Shown: in pieces, positions 25,117 to 57,801 of the stretch
How the letters are laid out: the number at the start of each line of letters is the position of its first letter
Position numbering within the stretch: position 1 is the stretch's first letter
Source: Hamiltosporidium tvaerminnensis FI-OER-3-3
Taxonomy: Eukaryota; Fungi; Microsporidia
Assembly (NCBI GenBank): GCA_022605425.2
Contig: JAKIMF020000001.1
Location: 1,054,001 to 1,118,000 of the forward strand
Length of the DNA: 64,000 nucleotides
Direction of reading: 5' to 3'
Program-made: the position numbers and the translations under genes
Notes under the pieces: model-generated
The model's input: only the letters and a program-made list of their open reading frames with translations
Database searches by the model: none
What the model was told of the DNA's origin: nothing

Positions 25117-26383
25117 TCAAATATTTTCAGTTTTTTCAAAATTATCTTCGACATCTTTTTCTTGGGAAGAAGATATTTTTCTAAATCTAGCCAGTTTGGT
25201 GCTATAAAATTCTTCTAATTTTTGTGCACATTTAAAATATTGTGTAGATGGTGCATTATAGAAATAACAATTATTTATCATCAGAAAGAAATCATCTGCA
25301 AGGTCTTCAAATTTTTCATACAATTCATTTCTCAAATTTCTTTCCATTGTAGATAAATCCATCGGATTTTTAATGACATGGAAATAATCGGGAACTTCTT
25401 GTTTGTTTACTGGTTTTAGAAATGGCCAAGCCGAAGGATGTGCTTGAAGTTCTGAAATAACGAAATACATTATATCTCTTATTCTCTCACTGCTTGGTTT
25501 AAAAATCAACATTTCATTTGTCAATTTTGCTTCTTTTATTCCCGGAATATCATAAACATTATTCATTTTAGAAAAATCAGGGTGAATCTCTTATAATATT
25601 AAATTCTGAAATTTTTTCCAGTTTTGAAATTAATTCATCTCGTTTATTTTGTATAAACTCATGTTTTTTTAAATAATTCAATTCCCATATCAGCTTACAT
25701 TGCATGAGAGTACCACCATCATAATCTTTAATAAATCCGATCCAATTTTTAAATCTTATATCTTTTGAAAATCCCTGTTTTTTAAAATATCCGATAGCAA
25801 AGTTATCAGCATAAGTAAGAAAATATAATGGAGAAATCAACGGTTTATAATTTGAATTTAAATATGAATCAACATCTGCAATTTTACTGCAATTAGGATG
25901 TCGTGATATTCCAATACTCTTTGATAAAATATTATCTACATCTTTAATTGTTTTGTTTTCATAATAATATCTAAACATTTCTAATTTACAATGTTCTTTA
26001 AATAAATCCATCATGAAACCGCCCCTTCCTTTTACTTGGCACTCGTTTTCGATCGCGCAAAATACAATTTCACAAAAATATTTTTCATAAAATGGTCTAT
26101 AACAGATTCCACCAATAATCTTTGATGAATCATCAACTAAAAATAAATTTCTATGTTTCATGTCAAAAACTTGTCGTAATATATATTCCTTTGGCATTTT
26201 TGGTAATTGCCTTTGAAATATAGCTTTTATTTCAAGAAGATTATCAGTATTTTTTTGTGTGTGTTCAAAAGCTGTAGAAGCAACATCAAATTTTATTAAA
26301 CCGTTTTTAAATTCCAATAAAACGTCTTCTTCACGCTGAAATTTCGCTTTAAAAATCTCGTTATTATTTATTATAAAGCTCAT
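25117..26383 (-). CDS. GCN5: Histone acetyltransferase GCN5: HAT domain (25577-26383) and bromodomain (25117-25566) in different frames, joined by a +1 shift
   Basis: HAT motifs FQRQLPKMPKEYI, EIVFCAI, QVKGRG, FLTYADNFAIGYFKKQGF, IKDYDGGTLMQC. Bromodomain SAWPFLKPV..VPDYFHVIKNPMDLSTM..NCYFYN. CCC motif before the first ATG. Confidence 0.93.
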
Positions 26384-26949: not shown

Positions 26950-27590
26950 AATGTATCTTAACGCAAGCATACGGTATAAAACGATGCCGAACTCTGAGTA
27001 TATTTGACTCTCTTAAATAAATACAAGTTTATGTCCTCATCAGATATTAGGAATCAATCTATTGCTAAAAGTCAGCTAAATATGGGTGTGAAAATAAAAG
27101 TAAATATTAGAAAGAATTTCATTTACGAATTTGGAGTGTAGATCTAGTTTATTTATATCAGATATGAAGTAAAGCATAGTAATACCGATTAGAATCTCAT
27201 ATCTTGATAAAACTTGATTAAATCTTACGGACGGAAAAACAAAAAAATCCGCGATTCTGGCAAAAATATTTGCTTTAATTATAAAGGTAAAGCCGAAATG
27301 AACAGTTATGCAATTTCTTAGTACGTATCCTTACAAAATAACATGTGGTGTACCTTAAGAAGCGGTTGGTATCATAAAGGCATTGATTTATATCGTTGAA
27401 ATGTTCTTTTCAACGAAAAACAGGGTCGGATTCATAATAAAATTAAAGTTAAGGCTAGAAACAAGCATAAATCAAAAACATAAAAAAACCAAAAAGATAT
27501 ACACACCCTATACTCTTTTAAAAACCCGATCGAATAGCAGAAGAATTCCGAATTTTATGTCCCCAATGTAGAACCCAGAATCGTGAATGA
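26950..27590 (+). mobile_element. Decayed 3' copy of the RLE non-LTR retrotransposon
   Basis: Degenerate equivalents of the KYDLLA..LIYK and MTWDG segments (27230-27360). Ends with AACCCAGAAT (27572-27581), as in the 3' UTR of the 37786-39060 copy. Confidence 0.5.
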
Positions 27591-27799
27591 TATAACCACA
27601 GATAAAAATCTAATATTATTCACACATTGAGCTAGGCATAGAAGAGTATGACTGTAAAGAGCCAAAAAGGTTGAATTTATTTGGATTACATAAATAAAAA
27701 AGATTTAGTTGGTATTTTAATCGAGTGTAGTTTATTTTGGTATACTACCAATTTTTCAGGTATAAAAAAAGTAAATTCTAAATCAAAAAATATACTTTA

Positions 27800-28934: not shown

Positions 28935-29006
28935 AAAACGATAATCTGGCTTCCAAACAAAATTCGGGTGAAAATACTCAAATACTGTTCGTTGAAACCA
29001 GATTAC
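28935..29006 (-). ncRNA. Candidate Pol III hairpin RNA, copy 1 (72 nt)
   Basis: GTAATCTGGTTTC pairs with GAAGCCAGATTAT; inner stems present; 3' end CGTTTT. CCACA lies 52 nt upstream (29058-29062). Confidence 0.6.
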
Positions 29007-29199
29007 TTGAAATGGTATAAAAATATTTATAAATAAAAATAAAATAATTTTTTATATTGTGGTTTCAATAAAGGAAATATAGAAAAAATCAATTTTTCTT
29101 CCAAAATCAGATTATTTTTTTATTATAAGAAAAATTTTATAACAATAAATTGGTTTTTTGTTAAATATCGAGATAATACTTGTTTTCTCTTAAAATATT

Positions 29200-37598: not shown

Positions 37599-37708
37599 AA
37601 AAAAATGAGGCCGGAGCCTCACACCTCTCGAAGCACACATGTCGTCCTTGCGCAGGGGCCATGCTAATCTTCTCAGTGTTGTTCCAAATCAATAGCGTGG
37701 TTACCCAC
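37599..37708 (-). ncRNA. U6: U6 spliceosomal snRNA (variant ACUGAGA box)
   Basis: Minus strand: 5' stem-loop GTGG-GTAA-CCAC, then TTGGAACAACACTGAGAAGATTAGCATGGCCCCTGCGCAAGGACGAC (conserved U6 core with AGC triad and ISL), a 3' hairpin and a T7 Pol III terminator. Confidence 0.96.
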
Positions 37709-37711
37709 AAA

Positions 37712-37772
37712 GGGGGTCAGAAAAAAATATTTAAAATAAAAAAAGTAATTTTCAAATAAAAATTGTGGTTTT
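37712..37772 (-). promoter_or_regulatory. Putative U6 upstream promoter: AAACCACAAT (about -56 to -60), TATA-like tract, CCCCC at -4 to -8
   Basis: Position matches a PSE/USE plus TATA layout. The same CCACAAT recurs 52-56 nt upstream of three hairpin units. Confidence 0.55.
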
Positions 37773-37785
37773 AAAGAATTTAAAT

Positions 37786-39060
37786 TTTATTTAATAAAAT
37801 TCTGGGTTAAAATATTTTTACCATTTTTTACATGTTTTCTTCTACCTCCTTAACCACTGCTGTTTCTTCTTCCAAATCCGACTTTAAATTTATGTTATTG
37901 GTCGGTTCCTCTAAAGTGGTTCCTCCTTGTATAAAGGGTGCTTTGTTTTTTGGTTTAAAATTTTTTGCACCATCTTCCTCTCTCTTCTCTTCTTTTAAAT
38001 AAGGTTTTAATTCCTCATGCATCTCTGCTCTCATAATAACACCCATTCACGCTCTCTCCCAGCTCTCTTCGGCATTTAGTCCTGACTCAAGTCCTCTTCG
38101 TCGATCAAAGGAAATTGTTTCGACTGTCTTCTTAAGTACTATAGACTGAATGTATGCCTCTATCTTCATGGAGATTTCTAGTCTTTTAAGATGAGATTCA
38201 TGGTATTTTGTCACAATACCGTCCCAGGTCATCACATAAGGGATTATCTCAACACTACACTTATAAATAAGACCCAAATATTTGGCTAGCAGGTCATACT
38301 TCCTAAGTTTTTCCGTTTATCTATTTGAAGTGAATCTTGGGAAGTGATTCCTACTTCGATGATTGTTATCTTATTCTTCTTCTTATCTAAAATAAATATG
38401 TCCGGTCTGTTATTCCGAATTTTAACATCAGTTTTAATTCTGGTGTCCACTCTTATCTCTGCATACTCATTATCAAGAATTTCTTGAACTGAGTGACTCC
38501 TAATTCGTTTTGAGGACTTAAACTTATATCTATTTAGGAGAAGTAAGTGTATGCATCTTACCACTTCATTATGCCGTCTGGTGTAGTCATGACCTAGCAT
38601 TTTTTCACATCTAGTTGCTAGATGATCTACAGTCCTACCAGACTTCCCACAATGTTGACACACACCATCTGCTCCCCAGAATATATTTCTATCCTGGATA
38701 TAGCAGAACACAGCTTCATTCTGTGACCTAATATTCGCTCTCTTTAGCCATCTTGAAGAGTCACTAACACTCACAAGCTCATTTTTTCCTTGCATTATAT
38801 AACTTTGAATGAAGTTTTCGTTTTTCTATTTCGTTATATAGTTTTGCAAGTTGAGCTTCTTCTAAACTTTTCTTAGTGACTTCTTCTACCCACCTGTACT
38901 TTACTTTTAAGAAGCCTTTTATTAGTGCAAGATGGGTTTTATTATTATTCTCCACCTTGAGGATTGCTGCTCGTCTAGTTGATATTTCTTTACTTTTTTC
39001 CAGACAATCCAAGAGTTGCAGAAGCATATGTTCGCTTCGCAACTCAACACTATGTAGGCC
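37786..39060 (-). mobile_element. 5'-truncated non-LTR retrotransposon with restriction-like endonuclease (R4/Dong/NeSL-type), frameshifted, 12-bp TSD
   Basis: CQHC-x8-H-x4-C knuckle, RRHNEVV, and RPD..IIEVG (PD-D/ExK) across ORF pieces 38779-39042, 38286-38795, 38047-38277 and 37828-38046. Direct repeat AAGAATTTAAAT at 37774-37785 and 39061-39072. Confidence 0.92.
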
Positions 39061-48580: not shown

Positions 48581-48850
48581 ATTTAATGTAGATTTTAATT
48601 CAGATAATTTCCTATAAAAGCTTCAAAAAATACATTTTTATTGTTTCATCATCACTTCTATAAATTACTTTATACTTAAAAAGTAATAGAATTGTAAATA
48701 TATTATCTTATATTCTAATTAAATATTTATTAATTAATTTAATCAATAAAATTAAATACCATATTTCTTATATTTAAGTCTTTTTTTTCAAAATAAAATT
48801 AAATGGAACTTTAAATTTAACAAAATATTTAAAGAATATTCAACTGAAAA

Positions 48851-49516
48851 ATAATATTCAATAATAATCAATAATATTCAATAATAATCAATAAGATTCA
48901 ATAATATTCAATAATAATCAATAATAATCAATAATCATCAATAATAATCAAAAATAATCAAAAATAATCTATAATAATCAATAATAATCAATAATAATCA
49001 ATAATAATCAATAATCATCAATAATAATCAAAAATAATCAAAAATAATCAATAAGATTCAATAATAATCTATAATAATCAATAATAATCAATAATAATCA
49101 ATAATAATCAATAATAATCTATAATAATCTATAATATTCAATAATAATCAAAAATAATCAATAAGATTTAATAATATTCAAAAATATTCAAAAATAATCA
49201 AAAATAATCAATAATGATCAATAATAATCAAAAATATTCAAAAATAATCAATAATATTCAAAAATATTCAAAAATAATCAAAAATAATCAATAATGATCA
49301 ATAATAATCAAAAATATTCAAAAATAATCAATAAGATTCAATAATAATCTATAATAATCAATAATAATCAATAATAATCAAAAATAATCAATAATATTCA
49401 AAAATAATCAATAAGATTCAATAATAATTTATAATAATCAATAATAATCAATAATAATCAATAATAATCAATAAGATTCAATAATAATCAATAAGATTCA
49501 ATAATATTCAATAATG
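48851..49516. repeat. 10-bp minisatellite ATAATAATCA with variant units, about 66 copies
   Basis: Strict 10-bp period over about 665 bp. Confidence 0.97.
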
Positions 49517-49776
49517 TTATAAAATTATTTTGATAAGCACTAGGATTAGATTTATTATCGAAATAGTAGAAATAAAAGCAAAACTATTGCAAACATGTTT
49601 AATATAAATTAATACATATATGTTGTATAGCAAATTAGATTAATCCCATAAATTTTAATTAAATATCTTTACTATTTGTTATAGTATATCTTTGTTCTCC
49701 TTTGTTTAACTAAATGAAAATATAACTTGGTATTGAAAATTTGTATTTAATTGAAAATTATGTGAAACCCATAAAA

Positions 49777-55967: not shown

Positions 55968-56039
55968 AAAACGGTAATCTGTCGCCATAGACAGTCTTGG
56001 AAAATATTTCCAACTAACTGTTAATTGCAACTAGATTAC
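55968..56039 (-). ncRNA. Candidate Pol III hairpin RNA, copy 2 (72 nt)
   Basis: Stems GTAATCT/AGATTAC, GTTGC/GCGAC, ACAGTT/GACTGT and TTGGAAA/TTTCCAA; 3' end CGTTTT. CCACA lies 56 nt upstream (56095-56099). Confidence 0.6.
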
Positions 56040-56199
56040 AACAAATTGTGATTAAAGGGTTTTATAAATTAAAACTCTCAATAAGCATTGGAATTGTGGT
56101 ATGATTTAACAATTAATAAAATTATTTTTTTCCAAATTTAGATATATTTTCTATTGCAAAAAAAATGTTTTTGAATAATACATGCCATATTTTCTTGAC

Positions 56200-57617: not shown

Positions 57618-57696
57618 AAAACGGTAATCTGGTCTCCTGCAACAGCGTTGGAAAGATAGGAACTTCCGATTAATTTGTGAAAAGAAACCAGATTAT
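57618..57696 (-). ncRNA. Candidate Pol III hairpin RNA, copy 3 (79 nt)
   Basis: 14-bp outer stem TAATCTGGTTTCTT/AGGAGACCAGATTA, inner GGAAG/CTTTCC, 3' end CGTTTT. CCACA lies 53 nt upstream (57749-57753). Confidence 0.6.
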
Positions 57697-57801
57697 ATAA
57701 TTCGGGATTAAAAAATTATAAAACAAAAAATATAAATTATTTTGAAATTGTGGTTTCAATAAAGAAAATATAGATATATTAATTTATTTTTTCATATTAG
57801 A

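What the first reader, a model, noticed from the sequence alone, without database searches (positions are those of the whole stretch)
28935..29065. Candidate new family of dispersed ~72-nt hairpin RNA genes with a U6-type promoter (copy 1 of 3)
Seen: three loci (28935-29006, 55968-56039, 57618-57696; all minus strand) start (G/A)TAATCT, fold into one long rod with paired 5' and 3' ends, and end AGATTAYCG-TTTT. Copy 1 is GTAATCTGGTTTCAACGAACAGTATTTGAGTATTTTCACCCGAATTTTGTTTGGAAGCCAGATTATCGTTTT. Each has CCACAAT 52, 56 and 53 nt upstream, against 56 nt for the U6 gene at 37708, and a TATA-like tract at about -20 to -30. Outer-stem G.U pairs form only on the minus strand. The stems look better conserved than the decayed flanks. 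Known: type-3 Pol III genes (U6, Y, 7SK) use an upstream element plus TATA and stop at T4 or longer. Inference: a multicopy Pol III small-RNA family I cannot assign to tRNA, snRNA or 5S. The geometry (paired ends, short 3' U overhang, variable core) resembles Y/VA RNA or a natural shRNA/Dicer substrate.
Basis: partly seen in the sequence, partly recalled or inferred. Interest (0 to 1): 0.93.

Follow-up and report, generated by a model that had tools for sequence, protein, structure and literature searches.

The report
Parasite hairpin genes with host-microRNA seeds
These hairpins are one subfamily of at least 50 tiny RNA genes that a water-flea parasite drives from its U6-type promoter, and several sister genes carry the targeting sequence of a host microRNA exactly where Dicer would cut, so the parasite may make its own copies of host gene regulators; no RNA has been detected yet.

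Summary
Observation confirmed. The genome is Hamiltosporidium tvaerminnensis, a microsporidian of Daphnia. The three hairpins are real (z -3.9 to -6.4), have two more copies on the same chromosome and a relative on C1, occur in H. magnivora, and match no Rfam family. They are not transposon tails. Their upstream element also precedes U6 and RNase MRP, and genome-wide it precedes at least 50 different hairpins that end at T4: long rods (class A, like the finding) and ~50-nt leader-plus-hairpin units (class B, found before by this scan on C8, s1-599454). New here: 6 of 25 class A genes carry a 7-mer seed of a Daphnia magna microRNA (miR-1, miR-124, bantam, miR-279, miR-981, iab-8) 18-20 nt from the stem base, the Dicer register (0.4-0.6 expected; compared by eye). 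The finding's own copies have no exact host seed, but copy 3 and its paralogues vary about five times more than their flanks, mostly in that seed segment. Dicer, Argonaute and a SNAP50-like gene are present; Ro60 was not found. Best reading: Pol III pre-microRNA genes, some mimicking host microRNAs. Caveats: no expression data; all copies have internal T4 runs.

The parts
28935..29006 (-). Copy 1: predicted 72-nt Pol III hairpin RNA, paired ends, 6-nt 3' overhang ending in T4
   Evidence: identical in isolate IL-G-3, 1-2 changes in H. magnivora
28938..28960 (-). Copy 1: inferred 3p small RNA, starting with U 20 nt upstream of the last paired base
   Evidence: inference from the register of host-seed matches in sister genes
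29056..29065 (-). Copy 1: PSE-like upstream element (AAACCACAAT)
   Evidence: class-wide pattern 73 hits vs 20 control
29026..29031 (-). Copy 1: TATA box; CC dinucleotide follows at 29015-29014
   Evidence: TATA plus CCC signal before microsporidian ncRNAs in PMC5499648
28460..28930 (.). Downstream flank shared by descent among copies (about 61-65% identity); decayed, not a current repeat family
55968..56039 (-). Copy 2: 72-nt hairpin, invariant in five of six orthologues and paralogues of two species
56061..56100 (-). Copy 2 promoter: element at 56093-56099, TATA at 56061-56066
57618..57696 (-). Copy 3: 79-nt hairpin; hypervariable subfamily, variation packed 10-20 nt upstream of the stem base
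57716..57756 (-). Copy 3 promoter: element at 57747-57756, TATA at 57716-57720
37599..37708 (-). U6 snRNA gene, the reference Pol III gene with the same promoter layout
   Evidence: Rfam RF00026, 63.5 bits (model start 37718, promoter geometry favours 37708)
37762..37771 (-). PSE-like element of U6

Best explanation
The loci are individually promoted RNA polymerase III mini-genes that make pre-microRNA-like hairpins. Inferred steps: a SNAPc-like factor binds the upstream element and TBP the TATA box; Pol III starts 55-61 nt downstream and stops at the T4 just after the stem; Dicer cuts about 22 nt in from the paired ends, with no Drosha step; the 3p strand, which starts with U and gets a 5' monophosphate, loads into Argonaute. 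Shown at sequence level: promoter layout, fold, strand, machinery genes, and the register of the seeds. The shared terminal stem is a scaffold and the 3p seed is the variable part. Several sister genes carry seeds of Daphnia microRNAs, so part of the class probably acts on host mRNAs; the targets of these five copies are not identified.
For: Promoter pattern 73 vs 20 control, shared with U6 and RNase MRP. Sites chosen on promoter alone carry a hairpin ending at T4 in 15/40 and 13/40 cases vs about 5% of control positions (p 5e-10 and 3e-7). All 25 class A stems start at +55 to +61. G.U pairs 57 sense vs 29 antisense (p 0.003) and U at register -20 in 14/25 (p 0.015). Daphnia seeds at -18 to -20 in L111 (miR-1), L127 (miR-124), L113 (bantam; also a weak Rfam hit), L120 (miR-279), L104 (miR-981), L147 (iab-8), by eye against PMC6828783 supplement 3; 0.42-0.61 expected in 125 positions; 4 in 115 without the two genes that suggested the register, p 7e-4 to 3e-3. 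Copy 3 group: 23/81 variable columns vs 11/210 in flanks, p 3e-7, 10 of them at -10 to -20. Dicer-like ORF of 1245 aa with two RNase III domains and Argonaute ORF of 1040 aa, no stops. SNAPC3 Pfam hit, 26.1 bits vs cut-off 23.8.
Against: The five copies of this finding have no exact host seed. All have internal T4 runs. The seed comparison was by eye and after the fact; only one of eight class A genes in the replication set had an exact seed (0.13 expected). The SNAPC3 hit is marginal and found no homologue outside Hamiltosporidium. U2 and RNase P lack the element. Class B units do not fit a Dicer duplex well.
Confidence: 0.62

Rival explanations
1. The RNAs work full length as protein-binding or decoy RNAs (like Y, sbRNA, Dictyostelium Class I or adenovirus VA RNA), for example occupying host Dicer or its export factor.
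For: Same gene architecture as sbRNA and Class I genes; conserved terminal stem and an invariant ACA at nt 19-21 in all family variants; class B has a single-stranded leader.
Against: No TROVE/Ro60 hit; no motif shared across the class; 16-28 paired bases rather than a short stem; does not explain host seeds in one register or the variation packed into the 3p seed segment.
Confidence: 0.17
2. They are diced, but act inside the parasite on its own mRNAs or repeats; the host-seed matches are chance or incidental.
For: Parasite Dicer and Argonaute are intact; Neurospora milRNAs are Pol III products (PMC3547838); the 5' arm of this family matches 12 of 13 nt of a site in a dispersed ~730-bp repeat.
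Against: Seed excess in register. A 13-mer with one mismatch is expected to hit some repeat family of this genome by chance, and the match does not extend.
Confidence: 0.12
3. These five copies are promoter-bearing but mostly terminate at their internal T4 runs, giving 17-40-nt RNAs, or copy 3 and its paralogues are decaying pseudogenes.
For: T4 is the usual end signal in the class, and copies 3 and 4 have T4 at nt 14; copy 3 has lost the first base pair and folds less well.
Against: The 3' arm and final T4 are conserved across subfamilies whose flanks are near 60% identical; pairing of the outer stem survives the changes, with a double change in copy 2; decay would not outrun the flanks fivefold; copy 2 is invariant (0/72 vs 21/210).
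Confidence: 0.06
4. The hairpins are transposon debris: a MITE, a SINE or the 3' UTR of a LINE.
For: Decayed RLE-type retrotransposon pieces surround the loci; two promoters on C8 are followed directly by repeats.
Against: Only five close copies, all from local duplication with their flanks; the unit has no other genomic match; no target-site duplications seen; the intact RLE 3' end has no such hairpin; each of about 50 units has a different sequence behind the same promoter.
Confidence: 0.03

Closest known systems
Retroviral Pol III microRNAs that mimic host microRNAs (simian foamy virus, PMC3993851; bovine leukaemia virus miR-B4 from memory)
   Same: Short Pol III hairpin transcripts; seed shared with a host microRNA while the rest differs.
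   Different: Here a eukaryotic parasite; dozens of separate genes; an external U6-type element plus TATA; processing and function not shown.
Neurospora crassa Pol III milRNAs (PMC3547838) and Nosema bombycis milRNAs such as Nb-milR8 (PMC8549759)
   Same: Fungal-lineage hairpin small RNAs; Pol III origin in Neurospora; a microsporidian milRNA reported to act on a host gene.
   Different: A text search of the Nb-milR8 paper found no mention of a polymerase and no host-seed sharing; the compact promoter-hairpin-T4 gene form and host seeds were not found described for microsporidia in my searches.
Nematode sbRNA / Y RNA (PMC4450293)
   Same: Many small genes, each with its own putative Pol III promoter, paired ends, poly(U) tail, clusters.
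   Different: No Ro60 found; no shared UUAUC loop motif; sequences differ from gene to gene across the class.
Dictyostelium Class I RNAs (PMC7919456)
   Same: Multigene class of 42-65-nt RNAs with an upstream element about 60 nt before the start that is shared with snRNA genes, paired ends, T-run end.
   Different: Class I has a short stem and a conserved 11-nt box; these have long stems and no common box.
Microsporidian ncRNA set of Encephalitozoon and Nosema (PMC5499648)
   Same: TATA and CCC signals before the start.
   Different: That study found 18 housekeeping ncRNAs and no Pol III upstream element; here an extra element at about -57 and a large non-housekeeping class.

Membership tests
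Type-3 (U6-like) Pol III gene | Upstream element at fixed distance, shared with U6 | tested here: met
   55-60 nt on U6, RNase MRP (variant) and all copies; 73 vs 20 genome-wide
Type-3 (U6-like) Pol III gene | TATA box about 25-30 nt upstream and T-run at the 3' end | tested here: met
   the end is T4 only, and internal T4 runs exist
Type-3 (U6-like) Pol III gene | SNAPc in the genome | tested here: inconclusive
   SNAPC3 Pfam hit just over cut-off on 52 residues; other subunits not searched
Type-3 (U6-like) Pol III gene | Transcribed by Pol III | not testable with these tools
microRNA / milRNA precursor | Stable imperfect hairpin of 55-85 nt with two ~22-nt arms | tested here: met
microRNA / milRNA precursor | Dicer and Argonaute available | tested here: met
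microRNA / milRNA precursor | Reads from both arms with sharp 5' ends and 2-nt 3' overhangs; Argonaute loading | not testable with these tools
   no expression data obtained
Host-microRNA seed mimic | Seed (nt 2-8) equal to a host seed in the processed register: class A as a whole | tested here: met
   6 of 25 genes vs 0.42-0.61 expected; by-eye comparison
Host-microRNA seed mimic | Same test for the five copies of this finding | tested here: not met
   only nt 1-6 matches: copy 1 to miR-375 at -21, copy 4 to miR-3791 at -18
Host-microRNA seed mimic | Represses host targets | not testable with these tools
   needs reporter or Argonaute pull-down work
Y RNA / sbRNA | Ro60 partner in the genome | tested here: not met
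   no TROVE match, controls positive
Y RNA / sbRNA | Rfam model match or conserved loop motif | tested here: not met
Dictyostelium Class I RNA | Short stem plus conserved 11-nt box | tested here: not met
tRNA, snRNA, snoRNA, 5S | ARAGORN or Rfam match; C/D or ACA boxes at the ends | tested here: not met
   the ACA at nt 19-21 is paired and internal
MITE / SINE / LINE 3' UTR | Many dispersed copies with sharp ends, inside a repeat consensus | tested here: not met

The most novel reading that the evidence does not exclude
A eukaryotic intracellular parasite keeps a library of dozens of U6-promoter shRNA-like genes on a few shared scaffolds, has evolved seeds of its host's conserved microRNAs on them, delivers the products to host Argonaute, and is still changing seeds quickly at loci such as copy 3.
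Probability: 0.45. Interest if true: 0.96.

Novelty: new variant of a known kind. Interest (0 to 1): 0.9.

Why it matters
Host-seed mimicry by Pol III hairpins is known from viruses; I found no report of it in a eukaryotic parasite (limited paper searches). If true it gives a concrete, testable route by which microsporidia could steer host development, and it names the genes. Even without mimicry, the work shows an upstream Pol III promoter element in a group where none was found (PMC5499648), a candidate SNAPc subunit, and about 50 unannotated small-RNA genes that can be found by promoter alone in other large microsporidian genomes.

Tried and rejected
Rfam on the window, the copies and 60 promoter sites: only U6, and a weak bantam hit on L113. 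ARAGORN: none. Metagenome pattern scan: one hit, inside bacterial coding DNA and not a hairpin. Genome-wide model search found five copies but scored only 150 candidates and missed the C1 relative found later. The 'converging LINE tail' reading: the flank right after T4 did not match the RLE 3' end and has no other genomic copies. A fourth unit at 27572-27690: no model hit. L008 as U1: it fits class B geometry better. Sponge reading for class B leaders: about one 7-mer site by eye, chance level. One later 13-nt degenerate pattern also covers copy 2, and model R1 holds copies 2 and 3.

Full report
ORGANISM. The window is C12:1054001-1118000 of a 21.64-Mb, 17-contig genome. Its aminopeptidase falls in a cluster named Hamiltosporidium tvaerminnensis and H. 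magnivora, microsporidian parasites of Daphnia.

OBSERVATION. The upstream element lies 56, 60 and 57 nt before the start, against 60 for U6. Rfam and ARAGORN give nothing for them. Two points were missed: copy 3 is not one rod, and every copy has an internal T4 run.

THE FAMILY. Two more copies lie 32-34 kb beyond the window in an inverted duplication of copies 2 and 3. A model of the family scores a unit on C1 at 31.6 bits (L107; its promoter occurs three times) and a unit on C2 weakly (L111); these and a unit at C12:1123943 share the terminal stem. The copies arose by duplication of a ~670-nt segment whose flanks are now 61-65% alike. The segment has no other match in the genome, and the flank after the terminator does not match the RLE retrotransposon tail. 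So this is not a MITE, SINE or LINE 3' UTR.

SELECTION. Orthologues came from three other assemblies. Copy 1 changes no faster than its flanks (2/72 vs 7/210). Copy 2 is invariant in five of six sequences (0/72 vs 21/210, p 0.003; p 0.045 with one decayed duplicate included). The copy 3 group is the reverse: 23/81 variable columns vs 11/210, p 3e-7, and 10 of the 11 positions from 10 to 20 nt upstream of the stem base vary. The outer stem stays paired, mostly through G.U changes on the 3' side, with one double change in copy 2, and ACA stands at nt 19-21 in all variants.

THE CLASS. I tested it. The element plus TATA plus CC has 73 genome matches against 20 for the control. It precedes U6 and, in a variant, RNase MRP, but not U2 or RNase P. 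Sites picked on promoter alone carried a hairpin ending at T4 in 15 of 40 and then 13 of 40 cases, against about 5% of AT-rich control positions. A looser rule gives 20 class A and 30 class B units besides this family (controls 0.14% under a stricter class A rule, and 3.5%). Class A: 55-80-nt rods whose stems all start at +55 to +61. Class B: about 50 nt, a 10-13-nt free leader, then a hairpin closed by the U tail. G.U pairs favour the promoter strand, 57 to 29. A SNAPC3 match just over the Pfam cut-off offers a binding factor. A study of Encephalitozoon and Nosema found TATA and CCC signals but no Pol III element (PMC5499648).

HOST SEEDS. Rfam gave L113 a weak bantam hit (E 0.08) centred on the 3' arm. 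I then listed 3p starts 17-21 nt upstream of the last paired base and compared them by eye with the Daphnia magna precursors in PMC6828783 supplement 3 (guide arms). Exact nt 2-8 matches: L111 to miR-1 (-20), L127 to miR-124 (-20), L147 to iab-8 (-20), L120 to miR-279 (-20), L104 to miR-981 (-19), L113 to bantam (-18); five also match nt 1. Expected in 125 positions: 0.42-0.61 (p 5e-6 to 4e-5). Leaving out L113 and L120, which suggested the register: 4 in 115, p 7e-4 to 3e-3. Only L147 came from the replication set (1 of 8 genes, 0.13 expected), so replication is thin. Off-register matches, counted by eye, were about 7 in some 3000 positions, near the 10 expected. U stands at -20 in 14 of 25 genes, including all four subfamily sequences here. 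Three more seeds sit at predicted start sites (miR-263a, miR-125, miR-87). Matches end after 8-10 nt and the miR-1-like gene shares this family's terminal stem, which points to convergence on a parasite scaffold rather than gene transfer (inference). The copies in this finding have no exact host seed, only nt 1-6 matches.

MECHANISM. Shown: promoter layout, fold, strand, copy structure, selection patterns, intact Dicer-like and Argonaute ORFs, no Ro60 hit. Inferred: Pol III makes a hairpin with paired ends; Dicer cuts about 22 nt in; the 3p strand, free of the 5' triphosphate, is the guide (general knowledge of Pol III viral microRNAs); its seed is the part that changes. Whether parasite or host enzymes do this, and how RNA would reach the host cytoplasm, is unknown. 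The internal T4 runs must be read through for copies 1-5 to work this way; that is untested.

COMPARISON. It works like the Pol III retroviral microRNAs that share seeds with host microRNAs (PMC3993851) and like Neurospora Pol III milRNAs (PMC3547838). In gene form it resembles sbRNA and Class I genes but fails their defining features. Microsporidian milRNAs acting on hosts are reported (PMC8549759), without this gene form as far as my searches went. MicroRNA status cannot be claimed without reads.

LIMITS. Unit counts are lower bounds.

VERDICT. Real, and larger than reported. Pol III hairpin gene class: about 0.9. Diced to guide RNAs: about 0.7. Best explanation as stated: 0.62. Functional host mimicry by the class: about 0.45. 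Interest 0.9.

Noticed in passing
window 25117-26383: GCN5 is split into two ORFs here but is an intact 421-aa protein in four other Hamiltosporidium assemblies, so an assembly error is more likely than a programmed frameshift.
   Followed up: partly
window 37671-37677: The U6 box that pairs with the 5' splice site reads ACUGAGA instead of ACAGAGA.
   Followed up: no
window 37786-39060; L085; L090: An RLE retrotransposon ends just upstream of the U6 element, and two C8 promoters are followed at their start sites by repeats: possible insertion preference for these Pol III promoters.
   Followed up: no
G000:C12:1109551-1118511 and 1145711-1152565: Inverted segmental duplication (93-97% identity) carrying copies 2 and 3, ORC1 and a KH-domain gene. 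In isolate IL-G-3 the two copy-3 paralogues differ by 2 nt from each other but 12-21 nt from those of this genome, which suggests gene conversion.
   Followed up: partly
L046:718-1692 (G000:C1:704249-705223): SNAPC3/SNAP50-like protein, annotated as hypothetical in H. magnivora.
   Followed up: partly
L123, L104, L119, L091: Seeds at the predicted start site: miR-263a, miR-125, miR-87 (7-mers) and let-7 (6-mer). L104 has host seeds on both arms.
   Followed up: partly
L168 and L156: L168 3p begins like the miR-365/miR-2788 seed family (from memory, not in the Daphnia list); L156 3p has a miR-305 6-mer.
   Followed up: no
L070-L083: Dispersed ~730-bp ORF-less repeat holding a site that matches 12 of 13 nt of this family's 5' arm.
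   Followed up: partly
L109, L110, L180: The same promoter precedes longer GC-rich units with no early T4; an earlier agent names SRP among such genes; not verified here.
   Followed up: no
L066:6494-6569: One H. magnivora orthologue of copy 2 has two stem changes and an altered terminator while its paralogue is intact: probably a decaying duplicate.
   Followed up: partly
window 48822-49528: Tandem repeat array of about 700 nt.
   Followed up: no
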